The notes under the pieces: model-generated
Database searches by the model: none
What the model was told of the DNA's origin: nothing
The model's input: the letters and a program-made list of their open reading frames with translations, nothing else
Assembly (NCBI GenBank): GCA_964252035.1
Contig: OZ176210.1
Length of the DNA: 64,000 nt
Strand: one strand, 5' to 3'
DNA from: Podarcis erhardii
Lineage: Eukaryota
Shown: piece by piece, positions 4,687 to 47,902 of the stretch
Layout of the letters: each line of letters starts with the position of its first letter
Numbering within the stretch: the stretch's first letter is position 1
Position numbers and translations under genes: made by a program

Positions 4687-5307
4687 TAACATGTAAATGA
4701 GCATACTATAGTGGTAACTTCATTTACTGATAAGCTCTATGCTAGGAAGCACTTATCTCTTCTGAGATGTGCTCTGTACTACCCACATATACTTTGTGGC
4801 AAGCTGGGGTTGTCCTGGAATTCTAAGTGGAACAGATAGTTACAGACCTCTGTTATGACTTGCTCGCTTTTTATTAAAAAATCCTATGCTAATATTGTCC
4901 AGTAGTGTTTCTGCAATAACAAGAGAGAAAAGTTTCCTTTCTCCTAGATTGTGCTTGTATTAGTTCTCTGAATTATGCCACAGTACACAGTGAAATAAAC
5001 CGTCCTCAAATCTGTATTTTGCCTATAAAGCTCAGAGTGCAACTTACACATGTGGCTGTGATCACCTATCTGCACACTGTAACTATATTTTCATTGCCTT
5101 CTTTCTGGTTCCTTCCATGTCAGTGGGGGTCAACCACTTTGTCCCTGTCTGAACTGCCAAGCACCTCAAGCTTGGATGTATGGAGGAGACAAGCACTACT
5201 TTGTTCCATTCTCATAGTCCTGTTGCTGGAGTAAGAAATGGTGTATTCTGCCCACTGCTTTTACATCCTCCCTTACCGATTATGAGTTGCTACAGCTAAT
5301 AGTGAAC

Positions 5308-5310
<3 letters not shown>

Positions 5311-5345
<35 letters not shown>

Positions 5346-5366
5346 TGTGTGTCTGTGTCTGTGTGT
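5311..5366 (+). repeat. Compound microsatellite (CT)16 plus imperfect (TG)n
   Basis: Seen directly. Confidence 0.95.
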
Positions 5367-5573
5367 GGCAGAAACTCAGAAAAATCTTTGTAAATAGTGA
5401 TGTGAGTCCCTTGCCTGTTAAGGTGAGTTGCTGTTGCGTGAGAGTGAAACTTTTTACAGTAATGCTTTCAACATAGTTCCAGTTACAGATAGGTAGCCGT
5501 GTTGGTCTGCCATAGTCAAAACAAAACAAATTCCTTCCAGTAGCACCTTAAAGACCAACTAAGTCAGTTCTTG

Positions 5574-5611
5574 GTATGAGCTTTCGTGTGCATGCACACT
5601 TCTTCAGATAC
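5574..5611 (-). ncRNA. Minimal type I hammerhead ribozyme motif (copy 1, antisense arm)
   Basis: Exact reverse complement of 5617-5654. Confidence 0.65.
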
Positions 5612-5616
5612 ACTGT

Positions 5617-5654
5617 GTATCTGAAGAAGTGTGCATGCACACGAAAGCTCATAC
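5617..5654 (+). ncRNA. Minimal type I hammerhead ribozyme motif (copy 2)
   Basis: GTAT-CTGAAGA-A-GTGTG(CATG)CACAC-GAAA-GC-TC-ATAC: conserved core, stem II, palindromic AGCT in place of stem III, stem I GTAT/ATAC; predicted cut after C5650. Confidence 0.75.
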
Positions 5655-5795
5655 CAAGAACTGACTTAGTTGGTCTTTAAGGTGCTACTGGAAGGAATTT
5701 GTTTTGTTTTGACTATGGCAGACCAACACGGCTACCTATCTGTAACTGGAACTATGGAAGGCACCACATTGAGCCGCATGAAATGGAAGTCCATC

Positions 5796-5848
5796 TCAGT
5801 GTATCTGAAGAAGTGTGCATGCACACGAAAGCTCATACCAAGAACTGA
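5796..5848 (+). ncRNA. Minimal type I hammerhead ribozyme motif (copy 3, extended stem I)
   Basis: Same core as copy 2; stem I is GTAT/ATAC, a CAAGA bulge, then TCAGT/ACTGA; predicted cut after C5834. Confidence 0.75.
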
Positions 5849-7565
5849 CTTAGTTGGTCTTTAAGGTGCTACTGGAAGGAATTTGTTTTGCTTTCAACAT
5901 ACATTGTTTTTAAGTTACATCCAATGATTCTTGCCCAGTTGCCCAGTGAATTTCTACATATGCATTGGATTTTTTCTTCTCTCCTCTGCAGCTCTCAATG
6001 CATCCTCAAAGCCCATTCTAAAGGGTCCTCAAATCTTTCAGAGAGGATTTTGGGGGTGCATGGAGAGCTGCAGTGAGGAGGAGAGAAAGACACAGGGTGA
6101 AATTCAGCTTCACACTAAGGAGATCATGCTGTCAGTGAAAGGATTTTTTGACTGCCTGACATAAGAATTTCCTCTCTTCTGCTGCCTGCTGTACTCTGCT
6201 CTGTAGTTTTTCCTGAGCTTCCCAAACAGATTTGGGGATGGTGGGGGGCATACAGGGAAGAAAGTGGGGGAGTCCCATTATGCTACTAGGACTAGTGCAG
6301 CTTAGTTGAATCTGGCCCAAAGTCGTGTGGCAAAAGCACACAAATCCATTTATATGATATTGGATGTCACCTATTGTTTTTACAATAAAGCTCCCACTTA
6401 GGTACCACTAAAGTTATGCATTTTTATTGTTTTGGGAGGCATTGTGGCTGAAAAGTGGTTAAATTAAAACCAACAACCATAAAGGCAACAACATGGTAAA
6501 TTATTTTTAAAGCAGCAATAACAATTAATAATTAATTAATAATTTTACATTTGGATGAGTATATTCGAAACTATTGCTGTGTACACACTCCATGGAATTT
6601 TTCCACTAGGACCTGGGGATGATTCAAAAGTTTGTATATCTGGAGCCACTTTAAGGATTTTCTAGCACAGAGGGTCTGCCAAACTAGAAATTAATGTTGT
6701 ACTGTGTGGGAATGTATTAATATGTGGTCCCTGAAGTGTTGTTTTAAAAAAAGACTAGGCTGATTTTCCTTTGCATTGTAAAGTTTCCTTTGAGTTCTAT
6801 CACTTCATATTTCTGGAAGAAGCTCACATTACTGAATGAACTTCCATTAAATGAAAATACATGCACATAGAAAACTTGCATACCAATAAGGGCTCTTTTA
6901 ATGTGGATTTGCGAGGGCGATCTAGGAAGATACAGAAGTAGCATTGTATATAGCAAAATCATAAAGTTATATCATAACACTTTTTGACTCTGGTAGGATA
7001 AGGGTGAAGTCTGCTGGAGTAAAGCTCATTGATGTGGGTTTTCCAGAAAAAAACCTGAATTAGGGTAATCTGCATAAGTTAATTTGCATGGGAAATTTTT
7101 CATTTTGGCATTGGAACCTTTTCTGAGGGTGATTTAATGCAGCATGTTTATTTTACATGTGTTTAGTAAAAGTTAAAAGCAATGAAACTGCCAAGCTTGC
7201 TTAATATGGCATTTGCGGTTGGCATCCATTCATAATTGCTAATGAATAGGTATTCGCAGAAAAATAAAGCACTGGAAAGTTTTCTGCCCTACATCACTGG
7301 TAAAGTTGGTAAGTTGTTTGACTGTTTGGTTTTTTGGGACCCCCAGCACTGGCAGGAAATGTGCAAAGCAGGGTTTTTGTTTTGGTTTGGTTTGGTTTTG
7401 TTCATCTGTTCCTGGACTGCATTTACTGCTGCTCTCCATACAAGGAGAGGAGAGCTGCAGGATATTCCTTGAAAGACCAACCCCAATTGATTTGCAACCA
7501 CTGGTCTTGAGGCCAAGACTTCTAAGTGGGGTGGGGGAGATAAATTTCTGGGCTGACGTGACTGT

Positions 7566-10012: not shown

Positions 10013-10410
10013 TTTCTTGTTATAAAATATTGATCAATTTATGGATATTTCCATAATATCAGTGGCATTGGATCATATATATCTGATATTTGATCAGTTC
10101 GTGGATATTTCTGTACTATGACATGATTCAAAGTAGTGAAAAGGTGTTCTTCTTTTGTAGCAAATATGTCTTGTGTTTCTGTCATGCCTTATGGTTGCCA
10201 AGAAATGAAAGAGCAACCCAGACGTTATTTAAATTGCATTTAAAGATGCATAAAAAAAATATCCAGTGTTTTTATTCTTTCTTCTGAGGACAGAAGGAGA
10301 CGAGATGCACTGTGTGTATTGATACTTTTAATTTCCATTCCTACTGGGAACTCTGTTTTCTGCAGTTTGGTGTACATTACTTTACTCTTATCTTTTTTTC
10401 TTCCCTATAG

Positions 10411-10577
10411 GCCATGTGTTTATACAGCGGGGTCTCCAATAAACAACAGGGCCCTTTTTCCATGCCAAGAACCGCCTGTTGCCATGTCAACATGGCAAGC
10501 TACAGTCCGAGCAGATGCATGCTTTGTTGTTTTAATGAGTGGTGAAAATGTAGCGGAACCAACAGGATCTGAAGAAG
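10411..10577 (+). CDS. AOPEP: Aminopeptidase O, coding exon 2 (167 nt)
   Basis: Acceptor tctttttttcttccctatAG; encodes PCVYTAGSPINNRALFPCQEPPVAMSTWQATVRA...VLMSGEN; donor G|GTACAG at 10578; phases fit both neighbours (2 in, 1 out). Confidence 0.96.
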
Positions 10578-11115
10578 GTACAGCATGTATTTGCCATCTG
10601 AATGTATGCTACAAAATGACATTTAATAAGTGTTTTATATCAGAACAGAGCTTCTGTCCATACAGTAGTCCTTTAAAATTCCCAGGCTCTCCTTTTCAAT
10701 TAACCTTGCTTTGACTCCGCCTCTTTCTGGTGCCAATTGCATTCTACTTTCTTTTACATGTCTCATTCCTTTATTGGTCTGTTTCTTCTGGTTATGCCTT
10801 CATTCCTGGTTAATCCCTTTCTCTCTTTGCAAAGTCTTGGACTTTCAGGAGTTAGTAATTTTGTAGATGTCACAAACGCATTACTATCCTTTTACTTAGC
10901 TGAAGAGACTAATAACAATAATATCTTCATGTATCAGAACAACTCATAAGATATTGAAATCCTGATCTAAAATGTTTGTGACTGTGTTTACTTGTGATAT
11001 TGGAATGATGTTCTTACATTGTGGATGAAATCAGAGTGATATATTAATTAATAATATTCATTAATAATATAGTGATCAGACTATTTATATTATTTCATTT
11101 CATAATTTTTCAGTA

Positions 11116-38698: not shown

Positions 38699-40593
38699 TA
38701 CCTTGCAGACCTCGCCCCCGAAACATGCTCCTTTTGAAGCTGAGGACACATTGCAATGTTTTGTTGCAGATTTCTAAACCAGTTGCAATGATGCCACATT
38801 TTTTTGTAGAGGCCATTGAAACAGGTGAGCTTTGCCCACAACAATTCTAATGAGTAAGTTGATCTTATGTAGTCATAAGGTTAATCACTTCAGTGGATCT
38901 GGAGTAATTGGGAGATTCATACCTTAGTAAGTGTCCCAAACCTCTCTGGAAATGCATGCATTCTTCAGTATGCCTAGAGAGTGACTCTACTGAAGAAGAA
39001 GAAAATCCTTACAAGAAGTTGTTACCTACAATACACAGGATGACACTTTAGTCTTGCATCATATGGTAAGCCAGATTTTCAATGTACAGTTGATGATGGA
39101 CCTTTCATTTATGAGATCATTTAACCTTATTTCCCTTCTAGTTTAATAAAGGAGGCTATTCCAAATGAATTTATGGCTCTGTATTTCTGAAAATCATGCA
39201 GTAAATATTTTTTAAAGACCTCAGTTGTTTAACTTATGTGTGGCTATTAACCCCCACACAATTTTGTTCAGAAAAAAATTGTTTTCTGGCCTTAGTTGCT
39301 CCACAGCACTGTTTAGAATTGCATAATCTGTGGGTTGCCGTAAAGTTGTTACAAATTGGAGGGCTGATATAATATGAAATGAGGCACCTCGCCTGAATGT
39401 TGCTTTTGTTTCCTCTTCAACAAATTAGCATGTTGACATTTGTCACTGATGGATTTTATTATTTGCTGAAAGGGTTTTAGGGGAGTTTGACAGCATGAAT
39501 GGTTTGTCCTACAGACTTTGAGAATCGATAAAGGCATCTTTGTTCTTTGTGCAAAACACACAACAGATATCTTATTGACTGACACGCATAAAAAGGAAGG
39601 CTTGTATAGCTGTTGCACAAAATAAGCTAAGAAAATAATTTTGAAGTCATTGCTTATTCTGTGTTCTCTCTCCCTATGTGTCTTTCTTTTTGTTAACATG
39701 TATCTCATTAATCAAAATAATGAGAATTGGTGGATGCTCAGTTGGTAAATGGAAGACATCCTATTTTATACCCTGAGCAGTATGCATACGGTTTGCGGAA
39801 GCTGATAAAAGCAAAACACAAACAGCATTCAATAGTATGACTGGTTTATTATGAAAACTATCTTTACCAATGGAGATCTAAGATAGGTGTTCTAAAACTT
39901 GTAGAATGTCTAAGGCAAAGATATAACAAACTAACTGTGTGGATGTAGAGAATCTTTGTACCGTATGTTAAGATGGAGTTAGACAACATTTGAGTCATGC
40001 TGCTTTGTTGCTTGTTTCTTGCAGAAGAAAAGGGGAAGACAGTTTATTAGTTCCTGATGTCTTCATTGCTTGAAACTGTGCAGAATATTCAGTAAGACTA
40101 TGCAGATATTGCATGCAAATCAGGCAGTTTGAAGACTTCATAATTCTATTTACTTATTGAAATGTTCTGTGGCATGGAAAGTTTAACTGGATATGATGTG
40201 ATCTAGTAAAGGAAAACTATACATCTCCTTTCTTGGTAAACAGAAATTACTGCCTGGTTCTCAAGACATACTAACTGAAGTGTATAAGTTTAGGTGCTGG
40301 TAATGCTTTTCTTCATTGCCCCAACCCCAATTTTCTGCTAGAAAAACCCATTGCAAAGCAGTTGAATTTTTTTTTTTTAATTGCTTATAACACAGAAAGC
40401 AATTCTTTTTTCTTGGTTTGTGTGACTAGGCACTGAATTTTTAACAATATTTTTAAACATAACATGGGTTAGCACAAAAGGTATCCGGTAATTTAAAATT
40501 TTCCTGAATACATTTGATGTATCCCTTCAATCAGATTTCATGTCCTTTATTTCTTTTATGTCATCTTACTAGCTAGCTTGACAGAAGTAGATT

Positions 40594-40701
40594 CAGGTAG
40601 GTAGCTGTGTTGGTCTGATGTAGTCGGAAAAAAAAAAAATGTCCAGTAGCACCTTAGAGACCAACTAAGTTTGTTCTGAGTATAAGAAGTGTGCATGCAC
40701 A
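40594..40701 (-). mobile_element. Degenerate Penelope-like pseudo-LTR fragment related to 5476-5888
   Basis: Shares ggtagctgtgttggtctg, ccagtagcaccttagagaccaactaagt and aagaagtgtgcatgcaca with the 5.5-kb element; the hammerhead core is broken. Confidence 0.7.
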
Positions 40702-40961
40702 TGATTTTTTTAATTTTATTTTGACAGAAGTAGACTTCACAGTTAATAAAGGTCCACTGAATCTCCCCCCTGCCCCTTTTTAAATGGCTATTCAAAGCTA
40801 CATGATTTTCCTTCTGGCCTGAAGAAATGGCATCGTCTTCTTTTTATTCTCAACTTGGATAGATTCTCCCTCTCTGCTCCCTTAGATTTCTGCCTGATCT
40901 GTTTTAAGAGCTTTCCCAACATATATCAGTAATATTAACATCCATGTATGGTCAACCAGTA

Positions 40962-45618: not shown

Positions 45619-46791
45619 TAAGTGTAACAGTGAAGCAGAGGTTTAAATAATGTTACATTGAAATCAGCAGAACAGACAAATGTTTAACTTTTATCCAATA
45701 TGTACATGTCTATCTGTAGGATAGTTCCAGATTAAAACCACTCTTCCCAGCTAGTATTTGTTTTGCAAACAGTAATTAATTTGCTATGGCACAGTCAATT
45801 GCAAATCCATTTTGGGGTAGAAAACTACAATAATGAAGTTGTTCCATGAACATGGCCAATTCCTGTAGCAAAACAGTTTTGACCCTGCAACAGATCAATG
45901 ATTTTTTGCATATGCAAGTTCCATTTACACAGAATGTGATCTGAATCTACTATTACACAGTGTTAAAACTCTTCCTACCTCACCAACCTTCATGATAGCA
46001 GCTTTTTCTCATTTGCTCCTGGGGATGTGCTTCCTTTGAGGGGTCACTACATTCAGTGCTCCAGAACTATGTTGACTCTTATGCATATAATGCAGAAAAC
46101 ATTACCTTCTGGTACTCTAAAAAGACTAAATAATATGAGCCTTGTGCTTTGTATATGCCAATTGATAGCTATCTAATTTATAAAGGGATGTCTTTATTTC
46201 ATTAATAATATGTAACTTGTTTGGATTCAGTCACTTTTAATTGATAAAAATGTATTTGTTTGCACAGAGTCATTTTCGTTGTGTGACAAGTATGATTACC
46301 TCAGTGTGTTAAAATTCACTGTTGTGAATTTTATCCCTAATCATACCTGTTTTGGTTTTAAGAACATGAATCAAGTATGTTAGGAAAACCTTTTGTCCTT
46401 GTGTGCAGTCTCTCTGTTTTTTTTGTTTTTTACCAAAGAGCTTCATTAAACTTTAAGCAAATACACTAAATTAAGCTAACGTGTCTATGATGTTTTTGTT
46501 GATTAAGTAGTACATGAGAATGATCTAATGTTTCCCCCCCTGTGGCTAATTTTCAAATTGGCACCTGTTACTCTCATTAGTCTTGAAGCCGAGCTGTATA
46601 GACTTGCTGACAGAGAGCTGAGTCTCATGCTGGTTAAACCATGGTTTGGATTTCAGTTGCTCTTTAAGAGTTTGTTAAGGAAATCTAAGAAGTTGCATCT
46701 TTAGATCTTCAATAAATAAGAAAGATTTGAGCTTGGTGGAAGAAAGTATATCTGTGCATTTACATTTGTGGTGGTGGTAGGAGTGGTTCCT

Positions 46792-47902
46792 CAAACTCAT
46801 GCTGGTAGCTTCAAGAACACCATCCAACCATCTCATCCTCTGTCGTCCCCTTCTCCTTGTGCCCTCCATCTTTCCCAGCATCAGGGTCTTTTCCAGGGAG
46901 TCTTCTCTTCTCATGAGGTAGCCAAAGTATTGGAGCCTCAGCTTCACGATCTGTCCTTCCAGTGAGCACTCAGGGCTGATTTCCTTAAGAATGGAGAATT
47001 CTGATCTTCTTGCAGTCCATGGGACTCTCAAGAGTCTCCTCCAGCACCATAATTCAAAAGCATCAATTCTTCGGCAATCAGCCTTCTTTATGGTCCAGCT
47101 CTCACTTCCATACATCACTACTGGGAAAACCATAGCTTTTACTATACGGACCTTTGTTGGCAAGGTGATGTCTCTACTTTTTAAGATGCTGTCTAGGTTT
47201 GTCATTGCTTTTCTCCCAAGAAGCAGGCATCTTTTAATTTCGTGACTGCTGTCACCATCTGCAGTGATCATGGAGCCCAAGAAAGAAAAATCTCTTACTG
47301 CCTCCATTTCTTCCCCTTCTATTTGCCAGGAGGTGATGGGACCAGTGGCAATGATCTTCGTTTTTTTGATGTTGAGCTTCAGACCATATTTTGCGCTCTC
47401 CTCTTTCACCCTCAATAAAAGGTTCTTTAATTCCTCCTCACTTTCTGCCATCAAGGTTGTGTCATCTGCATATCTGAGGTTGATGATATTTCTTCCGGCA
47501 ATCTTAATTCCGGCTTGGGATTCACCCAGCCCAGCCTTTCGCATGATGAATTCTGCATATAAGTTAAATAAGCAGGGAGACAATATACAGCCTCGTCGTA
47601 CTCCTTTCCCAATTTTGAACCAATCAGTTGTTCCATATCCAGTTCTAACTGTAGCTTCTTGTCCCACATAGAGATTTCTCAAGAGACAGATGAGGTGATC
47701 AGGCACTCCCATTTCTTTAAGAACTTGCCATAGTTTGCTGTGGTCGACACAGTCAAAGGCTTTTGCATAGTCAATGAAGCAGAAGTAGATGTAGAAGCAT
47801 GAGTTTGATCAAACTGCGGGAGGCAGTGGAGGACAGAGGTGCCTGGCGTGCTCTGGTCCATGGGGTCACGAAGAGTCGGACACGACTAAACAACAACAAC
47901 AA
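46792..47902. mobile_element. RTE-BovB LINE, 5'-truncated and 5'-inverted
   Basis: 13-bp TSD aggagtggttcct at 46779-46791 and 47903-47915. Minus-strand RT segment 46792-47791 (YAKAFD...GVRRGCILSP...LRYADD...VMYGSESW). Plus-strand 3' end 47792-47902 with a (CAA)n tail. Confidence 0.95.

What the first reader, a model, noticed from the sequence alone, without database searches (positions are those of the whole stretch)
5476..5888. Retrozyme-like Penelope derivative: tandem hammerhead ribozymes bracketing a 184-nt non-coding unit
Seen: a TSD-bounded 413-bp insertion with no ORF. Its direct part is a perfect 1.5-mer of a 184-nt unit, and each repeat carries a complete hammerhead core (CUGAAGA, an extra A, stem II GUGUG/CACAC, GAAA, CUC cleavage triplet, stem I). 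Stem III is reduced to a palindromic AGCU. Established: Penelope-like elements carry minimal type I hammerheads that work as dimers through such a palindrome, and non-LTR retrozymes (short tandem hammerhead units) produce small circular RNAs in several animal groups. Inference: the two sense copies could pair as a dimeric ribozyme, cut after 5650 and 5834, and release a 184-nt RNA (5651-5834) with 5'-OH and 2',3'-cyclic phosphate ends that an RtcB-type ligase could circularise. That would be a lizard retrozyme/circRNA family moved by a Penelope RT. I do not know whether this family is already described.
Basis: partly seen in the sequence, partly recalled or inferred. Interest (0 to 1): 0.88.

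Follow-up and report, generated by a model that had tools for sequence, protein, structure and literature searches.

The report
Composite Penelope insertion, twin hammerhead motifs
A young 413-base insertion is a fold-back plus partial-tandem copy of the end-piece of a hugely abundant lizard Penelope-like retrotransposon; its hammerhead ribozyme motifs are real but typical of that class, and nothing found here shows that it makes a 184-base circular RNA.

Summary
A 413-bp insertion (5476-5888) lies between perfect 13-bp target-site duplications. It has no ORF over 64 aa. Two identical minimal type I hammerhead motifs lie 184 nt apart on the + strand, with predicted cuts after 5650 and 5834.

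It carries a third motif on the - strand and makes a 285-bp palindrome.

Reads from two related species show that the hammerhead-to-3'-end module (about 135-150 nt) is enormously abundant. The 46-nt linker that creates the 184-nt period reaches only 0.4-3 % of the module's depth in DNA and is essentially absent from RNA. RNA depth is flat across the cut site, and no read ends pile up there.

In a + strand transcript of the whole insertion, hammerhead 1 is locked in a 138-bp duplex.

The layout (inverted 5' copy, partial tandem, "tail", minimal hammerhead) is the published hallmark of Penelope-like element insertions. Reptile non-LTR retrozymes derived from such elements were reported in a 2026 preprint.

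This scan has already met similar composites elsewhere in this genome, noted there with spacings of 127, 177 and 202 nt.

Verdict: an ordinary, dead-on-arrival by-product of Penelope integration. The circular-RNA reading is unsupported.

The parts
5463..5475 (.). Left target-site duplication, TGCTTTCAACATA
   Evidence: Perfect 13-nt direct repeat with 5889-5901. The whole 13-mer can pair with the template just past the left arm's start (5753-5763). P about 0.0008 for random window 13-mers.
5476..5613 (-). Module copy in - strand sense (hammerhead to 3' end). It carries hammerhead 3 (helix I to helix I at 5611-5574, predicted cut after the C at 5578). Its 3' end abuts the left duplication.
   Evidence: 100 % complementary to 5615-5752. 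Descriptor hit on the - strand. It ends 1-5 nt beyond the family's usual 3' ends, 5746-5751.
5614..5614 (.). Single-base centre of the 285-bp palindrome. It lies 2-3 nt upstream of the base where most family copies begin.
   Evidence: loose ends 'before 5801', the equivalent of 5617.
5615..5752 (+). Sense module copy 1 with hammerhead 1. Helix I 5617-5620 / 5651-5654, core 5621-5627, extra A 5628, stem II 5629-5642, GAAA 5643-5646, AGCU 5646-5649, predicted cut after C5650.
   Evidence: Fully paired with 5476-5613 in the minimum-energy fold of the insertion (-296 kcal/mol).
5753..5798 (+). 46-nt linker, probably the element's optional 'tail' or continuation past the first reverse-transcription start. 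It joins to the 5' end of the next module copy and creates the 184-nt period.
   Evidence: Depth is 38-84 thousand (run X1) and 16-37 thousand (run X5), against 2.5-4.4 million for the module and 22-47 for single-copy flank. Depth falls from left to right. RNA gives 0-1 reads. Most family copies carry a different, TATA-containing block before 5796.
5799..5888 (+). Partial sense module copy 2 with hammerhead 2 (5801-5838, predicted cut after C5834). It is cut short in the T-rich tract.
   Evidence: 100 % identical to 5615-5704. Descriptor hit. The junction shares TG(C/T)TTT with the target.
5889..5901 (.). Right target-site duplication, TGCTTTCAACATA
   Evidence: A 1734-nt contig of run X1 crosses 5867-5980 without a difference. 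A contig of the related organism C (run X5) matches only from 5889 onward, at 92 %.

Best explanation
This is one recent, dead-on-arrival integration product of a very abundant Penelope-like retrotransposon (PLE). It is built only from the element's terminal module: the hammerhead motif at or near the transcript's 5' end, running to the internal reverse-transcription start site.

Likely course (inferred):
1. The element's endonuclease made a 13-bp staggered cut.
2. Both freed 3' ends annealed to short element RNAs and primed reverse transcription.
3. The left end started at the usual start site and copied one module to the RNA's 5' end (5476-5613).
4. The right end started by microhomology inside the T-rich tract and copied to an RNA 5' end (5888 back to about 5797).
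5. Synthesis then switched to a second RNA carrying the 'tail' and copied that to its 5' end (5798 back to 5615).
6. The two products were joined head to head at 5614.

A snap-back of one cDNA is the alternative route to the palindrome.

The hammerhead motifs are passengers of the template. They were not cut before copying. The locus has no promoter block of its own. It is probably transcribed only passively within the host gene region, where it folds into a long hairpin. I infer no function for the 184-nt interval.
For: Shown:
- Perfect duplications and 100 % identical arms and repeats indicate one young event.
- The module is a hyper-abundant repeat in two species. Summed contig depth is 1-4 million, against 22-47 for the flank. 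Copies mostly begin at G5801 or continue upstream into another, TATA-containing block. They mostly end at 5746-5751.
- The left arm ends at the equivalent of 5752, and the palindrome centre sits 2-3 nt before the common 5' end.
- The linker is 30-200 times rarer than the module and absent from RNA.
- Both junctions show target/template complementarity. Joint P is about 1e-4, judged post hoc.
- A related species' contig matches only from the first base of the right duplication, which is consistent with an empty site there.
- A second, older mini-copy with a 14-bp duplication lies at 40592-40720.

From the literature:
- PLE insertions are typically 5'-truncated partial tandems with an adjacent inverted 5'-truncated copy and a 30-40-bp 'tail', and hammerheads sit in the pLTR (PMC8557442).
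- The Anolis element PAc cuts and extends both target strands and starts reverse transcription internally, 111-118 nt after the start of stem II. Here that distance is 117-122 nt (5629 to 5746-5751).
- PAc uses uncleaved RNA, and no RNA-seq ends are seen at its hammerhead site (PMC11167929).
Against: - Twin priming versus snap-back cannot be separated from one locus.
- PMC11167929 reports in vitro initiation without homology to the cut DNA, whereas this locus shows microhomology at both ends.
- The autonomous partner (RT/GIY-YIG ORF) was not found in the window. The origin of the linker as 'tail' therefore rests on the depth gradient and on an unquantified by-eye resemblance to the start of Poseidon_Ac.
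- A 98-nt contig of organism C (run X5) also carries the linker-to-hammerhead junction (5755-5826), so that junction recurs at least once elsewhere.
- The RNA data come from a related species that probably lacks this insertion. The libraries are ordinary fragmented ones, which do not capture ends well.
Confidence: 0.8

Rival explanations
1. One reading: a retrozyme-like non-autonomous unit. The two sense hammerheads pair through AGCU as a dimer and cut after 5650 and 5834. The 184-nt RNA is then circularised by an RtcB-type ligase and copied by a Penelope reverse transcriptase.
For: - Two intact identical motifs lie 184 nt apart.
- The minimal PLE hammerheads are published as dimer-dependent (PMC4209133; PMC6765202).
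- The family shows no variant at 10 % or more in 5801-5841, against 12 variable sites in the other 94 covered module positions. P is about 0.01-0.04.
- PLE-derived non-LTR retrozymes averaging 176 bp are reported in reptiles (10.64898/2026.07.22.740005).
- One contig in a related species repeats the linker-to-hammerhead junction.
- The Anolis PLE hammerhead does cleave when its protein is present (PMC11167929).
Against: - The linker needed for the 184-nt unit has 0.4-3 % of module depth in DNA and 0-1 RNA reads against 300-400.
- There is no pile-up of RNA ends and no depth dip at 5834/5835.
- Hammerhead 1 is inside a 138-bp perfect duplex in the + strand transcript.
- There is no TATA block upstream of either sense motif.
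- Genomic copies do not begin at the cut site but 34 nt upstream of it.
- Other composites noted in this genome have spacings of 127, 177 and 202 nt (unchecked notes), which fits variable junctions better than one unit.
- Retrozymes as defined in PMC7229834 carry canonical hammerheads with loop-loop contacts in multimeric arrays, not minimal ones in a 1.5-mer.
Confidence: 0.08
2. The insertion matters as a 285-bp perfect hairpin. Intronic or read-through RNA folds into long double-stranded RNA that is diced into small RNAs against the Penelope family, or is edited, or the palindrome acts as a fragile site in DNA.
For: - 138-bp perfect stem, minimum energy -296 kcal/mol.
- Many microRNA precursor models score on it simply because it is a hairpin, all below their thresholds.
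- Family RNA is present from both strands.
- A probable M1-peptidase exon lies on the + strand 4.5 kb downstream.
Against: - No small-RNA data were examined.
- Every Rfam hit is under its gathering score.
- Only two RNA-specific A>G sites were seen, rather than hyper-editing.
- The insertion is young and probably lineage-specific, so there is no sign of selection.
Confidence: 0.05
3. Assembly artefact: the palindrome and partial tandem were created by a chimeric or fold-back read.
For: Perfect palindromes with a 1-nt centre are a known artefact type. The best DNA holder may be the sample the window was assembled from.
Against: - Perfect 13-bp duplications flank the whole structure.
- A short-read contig crosses the right junction without a difference.
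- The same layout is the documented norm for PLEs (PMC8557442).
Confidence: 0.03

Closest known systems
Penelope-like element insertions (Penelope/Poseidon clade; PAc / Poseidon_Ac of Anolis carolinensis)
   Same: - Duplication-flanked, 5'-truncated copy with an adjacent inverted 5'-truncated copy, a partial tandem and a 'tail' (PMC8557442).
- A minimal hammerhead sits just downstream of a TATA block.
- Reverse transcription starts internally about 115-120 nt after the start of stem II. Both target strands are extended, and uncleaved RNA is the template (PMC11167929).
   Different: - No RT/GIY-YIG ORF here, only the terminal module.
- The stem sequences of the hammerhead differ from Poseidon_Ac (by eye against File S1; no alignment was run).
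- No ORF starts in stem II; stops occur in all three frames within 50 nt.
- Microhomology is seen at both junctions here, but was not seen in vitro for PAc.
Minimal PLE hammerhead (min-HHR; Cervera & de la Pena 2014; Lunse, Weinberg & Breaker 2017)
   Same: [quoted passage not shown]
   Different: Activity is untested. Stem II (14 nt) is itself a perfect palindrome, so two copies can also pair stem II to stem II, as in the minimum-energy fold of 5615-5888.
Metazoan non-LTR retrozymes (PMC7229834; vertebrate survey 10.64898/2026.07.22.740005)
   Same: Short, AT-rich, non-coding tandem unit with one type I hammerhead per unit, long duplications, and PLE-related origin. The unit length (184 nt) is close to the reptile mean of 176 bp.
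   Different: Only 1.5 units, fused to an inverted copy. The hammerhead is minimal rather than canonical. The unit is not the family's common form. No circular or unit-length RNA was seen.
Twin-priming inversions of LINE-1
   Same: Both ends of a staggered break prime cDNA synthesis by microhomology, giving an inverted 5' part and a direct 3' part inside one pair of duplications.
   Different: A different retroelement class. Here both arms reach the RNA's 5' end, giving a perfect palindrome, and one arm adds a template switch.

Membership tests
Minimal PLE hammerhead (min-HHR, PMC4209133) | Catalytic core CUGANGA ... GAAA ... U-H, with a G10.1-C11.1 pair closing stem II | tested here: met
   Three identical hits, each with a 5-bp stem II and a 4-nt loop; sequence.
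Minimal PLE hammerhead (min-HHR, PMC4209133) | [quoted passage not shown] | tested here: met
   Extra A at 5628 and 5812. AGCU at 5646-5649 and 5830-5833.
Minimal PLE hammerhead (min-HHR, PMC4209133) | More than chance, and conserved within the family | tested here: met
   0 descriptor hits in 300 random 64-kb sequences. No variant at 10 % or more in 5801-5841, against 12 variable sites elsewhere in the module.
Minimal PLE hammerhead (min-HHR, PMC4209133) | Self-cleavage, as a dimer or with protein assistance | not testable with these tools
   Indirect only. There are no RNA ends at the site, and the genomic copies were made from uncleaved RNA.
Rfam Hammerhead_1 (RF00163) and the hammerhead clan | Covariance-model match | tested here: not met
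   No hammerhead family listed at E<=10 on 5300-6100 or on 5770-5880, and none at gathering score in the window.
Penelope-like element insertion | Duplication-flanked insertion with an inverted 5'-truncated copy, a partial tandem and a tail extension | tested here: met
   compared with the description in PMC8557442.
Penelope-like element insertion | Belongs to a dispersed repeat family with fixed internal reverse-transcription start sites | tested here: met
   Module depth is about 1e5 times the single-copy flank. Ends cluster at 5746-5751 with unrelated flanks beyond.
Penelope-like element insertion | RT plus GIY-YIG ORF of the same family (autonomous partner) | tested here: inconclusive
   None lies in or next to the insertion. 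The only RVT_1 ORF in the window (46675-47712) is not adjacent to a module and shows no GIY-YIG match. The rest of the genome could not be searched.
Non-LTR retrozyme (PMC7229834) | Tandem array (dimer to multimer) of a constant unit, each with a hammerhead, as the family's usual genomic form | tested here: not met
   1.49 units only. TRF reports no array. The linker has 0.4-3 % of module depth.
Non-LTR retrozyme (PMC7229834) | Canonical type I hammerhead with loop 1-loop 2 contacts | tested here: not met
   Minimal variant with a 4-bp helix I and no helix III hairpin.
Non-LTR retrozyme (PMC7229834) | Unit-length linear and circular RNA in vivo | tested here: inconclusive
   Two RNA-seq runs of a related species give 0-1 reads on the linker, no end pile-up and no informative back-joint. 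There were no circular-RNA libraries and no RNA from the source species.

The most novel reading that the evidence does not exclude
Partial tandems of Penelope mini-copies joined tail-to-5'-end, like this one, are the genomic source of the 'non-LTR retrozymes' reported in reptiles. With help from the element's own protein, intervals bracketed by two minimal hammerheads (here 5651-5834) would be excised and circularised in vivo, giving amniotes a ribozyme-made circular RNA class. A second, smaller possibility is that Penelope integration in vivo uses base pairing of both cut target strands with the template RNA, which the in vitro system did not show.
Probability: 0.08. Interest if true: 0.55.

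Novelty: new member of a known kind. Interest (0 to 1): 0.15.

Why it matters
Little in itself. It is one of a very large number of copies of a known kind of element, and the idea that such units are Penelope-derived retrozymes is already in print.

It has two modest uses.
- It is a clean, unmutated record of one Penelope integration event. It shows both strands primed, microhomology at both junctions, a template switch at an RNA 5' end, and hammerheads copied uncleaved. This complements the in vitro work on the Anolis element.
- It is a caution for retrozyme surveys. Tandem hammerhead 'units' of about 130-200 nt in reptile genomes can be by-products of Penelope integration rather than circular-RNA genes.

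Tried and rejected
- **Rfam.** The search gave only sub-threshold microRNA models, which score on any perfect hairpin, and no hammerhead. I do not take this as evidence against the motif, because these minimal variants lack helix III.
- **'Goes back 182-187' joints in read laying.** They looked like circle or tandem junctions. They are trivial: the laid stretch began at 5700, so ordinary module continuity (5888 is the equivalent of 5704, followed by 5705) appears as a back-jump.
- **Dimer energetics.** Helix III between the two motifs crosses helix I, so nearest-neighbour folding cannot score it. I dropped this.
- **The RVT_1 ORF at 46675-47712 as the autonomous partner.** There is no module beside it.
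- **RNA-only A>G at 5852 and 5863 as editing of the hairpin.** Only two sites are affected, and a few genomic contigs carry G there, so an expressed variant copy is more likely.
- **Alignment of the module and linker to the Poseidon_Ac consensus** (supplement of PMC11167929). I compared by eye only and draw no conclusion from it.
- **PDB search of the exon-like ORF.** No hits.
- **Supplement of the 2026 preprint.** The held file is an oligo order form and gives no species list.
- **Organism names.** They are coded in the reads tools.
Full report
**What is there**

The stretch 5476-5888 (413 bp) lies between two perfect copies of TGCTTTCAACATA, at 5463-5475 and 5889-5901. It has four parts.

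- **Antisense arm, 5476-5613.** It is 100 % complementary to 5615-5752. The inverted repeat as found is 142 nt, because it runs 4 nt into the flank. A single base, 5614, sits at the centre.
- **Sense module, 5615-5752.**
- **A 46-nt linker, 5753-5798.**
- **A second, partial sense module, 5799-5888.** It is identical to 5615-5704.

In fact a third of the insertion is a mirror copy, and the whole forms a 285-bp perfect palindrome. No ORF longer than 64 aa overlaps it. TRF reports no tandem array.

**The hammerhead motifs**

I wrote a descriptor from the features that Cervera & de la Pena list for minimal PLE hammerheads (PMC4209133). These features are:

- CUGANGA;
- an optional extra base before stem II;
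- a G-C-closed stem II;
- GAAA;
- a palindromic insert instead of helix III;
- U-H;
- a helix I of at least 4 bp.

The descriptor finds exactly three hits in the 64-kb window, all in this insertion. Predicted cuts are after 5650 and 5834 on the + strand and after the C at 5578 on the - strand. It finds none in 300 randomised windows.

Rfam's hammerhead models do not match, even at E<=10 on a 111-nt slice. The many microRNA models listed score only because the region is a perfect hairpin, and all are below threshold.

**What the family looks like**

I laid contigs of two DNA runs and raw reads of two RNA runs on 5700-5980. The DNA runs were X1, the best holder, and X5, from a related organism C. 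The RNA runs were X23 and X24, both from organism C.

| Region | X1 summed contig depth | X5 summed contig depth | RNA reads (X23, X24) |
|---|---|---|---|
| Module | 2.8-3.7 million | 2.5-4.4 million | 300-400 |
| Linker, 5760-5789 | 38-84 thousand | 16-37 thousand | 0-1 |
| Single-copy flank | 21.6 | 47.1 | not covered |

- **Abundance.** The module is one of the most abundant repeats of these genomes. The tool warns that summed depth is not a copy number.
- **3' ends.** Most copies stop at 5746-5748 or 5751, followed by unrelated flanks.
- **5' ends.** Most copies start at G5801, again with unrelated flanks. Others continue upstream into a different, well-conserved block that contains a TATA motif about 33 nt before G5801.
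- **Linker.** Its depth is 0.4-3 % of the module's, and it falls from left to right across the linker.

The 184-nt period is therefore not the family's unit. The common unit is the module of about 135-150 nt.

The declining depth fits the optional 30-40-bp 'tail' described for PLEs (PMC8557442, PMC11167929). It could also be the continuation of longer copies past the first reverse-transcription start. One 98-nt contig of organism C repeats the linker-to-hammerhead junction, so that junction is not unique to this locus.

**Tests that bear on self-cleavage and circles**

- **RNA ends.** RNA depth is flat across 5834/5835, at 389, 384 and 356 in successive 10-nt bins of run X23. The tool found no place where molecules begin or end in excess.
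- **Upstream read-through.** About half of the RNA reads at the 5' edge of the motif run upstream into the TATA block. They are read-through transcripts rather than processed units.
- **Strands.** Both strands are represented about equally.
- **Back-joints.** The 'goes back about 184' joints are an artefact of where I started the reference. They only show module continuity.
- **Genomic copies.** They begin 34 nt upstream of the cut site, not at it. All three module copies of this locus were copied straight across the site. The templates were therefore uncleaved.
- **Folding.** A + strand RNA of the whole insertion folds at -296 kcal/mol, with hammerhead 1 entirely inside a 138-bp duplex. In the sense part alone, the two palindromic stem II segments pair with each other.
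- **Promoter.** Neither sense motif at this locus is preceded by the TATA block.

One result favours a working ribozyme in the family. No variant at 10 % or more occurs in 5801-5841, whereas 12 variable sites lie in the other 94 covered module positions. P is about 0.01-0.04, and subfamily structure is not excluded.

**How it probably arose**

The published picture of PLE insertions has four features: strong 5' truncation, partial tandems forming pLTRs, an adjacent inverted 5'-truncated copy, and a tail at either end (PMC8557442).

For the Anolis element PAc, the purified protein cuts and extends both target strands. It starts reverse transcription internally, 111-118 nt after the start of hammerhead stem II, with a second start one 'tail' further on. 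It uses uncleaved RNA. Its hammerhead cleaves only with protein present, and no RNA-seq ends map to the site (PMC11167929).

This locus has the same geometry. Stem II starts at 5629 and the usual ends are at 5746-5751, which is 117-122 nt later.

I therefore read the locus as one event.

1. The left target end primed at the usual site and copied one short RNA to its 5' end.
2. The right target end primed inside the T-rich tract.
3. That synthesis reached an RNA 5' end near 5797-5799.
4. It then switched to a tail-bearing RNA and copied that to its 5' end.
5. The two products were joined at 5614.

A snap-back of a single cDNA is the alternative for the palindrome. The arm ends within a few bases of the canonical start site, which favours separate priming.

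The whole 13-nt duplication can pair with the template just beyond the left arm's start: 4 bp, a 2-nt bulge, then 7 bp. The right junction shares TG(C/T)TTT with the module. With random 13-mers from the window as targets, these matches occur at 0.0008 and 0.011, and jointly at 1e-4.

This is post hoc and rests on one locus. The older mini-copy at 40592-40720 shows no such match. PAc did not need homology in vitro. It is a lead, not a finding.

**Age and setting**

The arms, the repeat and the duplications are all perfect. A contig of organism C matches the right flank at 92 % but only from 5889, the first base of the duplication. This is consistent with an empty site there. I could not confirm it, because the left flank was outside the laid stretch.

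An exon-like ORF with an M1-peptidase N-terminal signature lies on the + strand at 10319-10714. The support is weak: Pfam E=5e-4, below the cut-off, and an Atlas score of 0.93. If so, the + strand of the insertion is transcribed passively, as a hairpin-forming intron segment.

**Comparison with what is known, and novelty**

- **Minimal PLE hammerhead class.** Every sequence feature is met. Activity is untested.
- **Layout.** It is a textbook PLE composite.
- **Non-LTR retrozymes as defined in PMC7229834.** The locus fails three criteria: canonical hammerheads, constant multimeric arrays and abundant circles.
- **The broader 2026 survey.** It finds PLE-derived tandem hammerhead units in 4 of 5 reptiles with a mean consensus of 176 bp (10.64898/2026.07.22.740005). 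Its pipeline starts from TRF-detected tandem repeats, and TRF reports none here, so this 1.5-mer would probably not be picked up, although the unit is of the size it reports.

Either way the concept is published. This scan has already examined similar composites in the same genome, recorded with spacings of 127, 177 and 202 nt, and reached similar verdicts. I treated those notes as leads. I tested two of their claims independently: the fixed 5' end and the TATA spacing.

I rate this a new member of a known kind, of low interest. The circular-RNA reading for this locus gets about 8 %.

**Limits**

- Organism names are coded, so 'lizard' is not verified here.
- The RNA is from a related species and from ordinary libraries.
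- The rest of the genome could not be searched for the autonomous partner or for the distribution of periods.
- The Poseidon_Ac consensus could only be compared by eye.

Noticed in passing
window 40578-40734 (- strand): An older mini-copy of the same module, about 79 % identical, at 40592-40720. It is flanked by a perfect 14-bp duplication TCTACTTCTGTCAA. It ends at the family's usual 3' site. Its 5' end is a short rearranged piece of stem II, and no CUGANGA core is left.
   Followed up: partly
window 5463-5475 / 5753-5763 and 5889-5894 / 5705-5710: Target/template complementarity at both junctions of the insertion. Random window 13-mers match as well at P=0.0008 (left) and 0.011 (right), and jointly at 1e-4. 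This hints at annealing-primed initiation on both target strands, unlike the in vitro report for the Anolis element.
   Followed up: partly
window 5852 and 5863 (family-wide, runs X23/X24): A>G in 23-38 % of RNA reads of one read orientation, but under 0.2 % of DNA depth in the same species. This is either A-to-I editing of sense module RNA or one strongly expressed variant copy. Only two sites are affected, so the latter seems more likely.
   Followed up: no
window 5796 upstream (family consensus, not this locus): In most longer family copies, and in about half of the RNA reads, the hammerhead is preceded by a conserved TATA-containing block. The TATA lies about 33 nt before the base where most short copies begin. 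This fits a pLTR promoter firing just in front of the ribozyme. The block is absent at this locus.
   Followed up: partly
window 46675-47712 (- strand): A 345-aa ORF with the C-terminal half of a reverse-transcriptase domain (RVT_1, E=4e-16). It shows no GIY-YIG match and has no hammerhead module nearby. It is probably a LINE fragment.
   Followed up: partly
window 5971-6088: An imperfect inverted repeat (52-nt arms, 75 % complementary, 14-nt spacer), 80 nt downstream of the insertion. It also draws sub-threshold plant and animal microRNA models. Its nature is unknown; it may be a small foldback element.
   Followed up: no
window 5307-5368: A (CT)18 microsatellite followed by a GT-rich run, about 100 nt upstream of the insertion site. 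Some PLE clades are reported to favour microsatellites (PMC8557442).
   Followed up: no
window 10319-10714 (+ strand): An exon-like ORF with a weak Peptidase_M1 N-terminal signature (Pfam E=5e-4, below the cut-off; Atlas feature score 0.93).
   Followed up: partly
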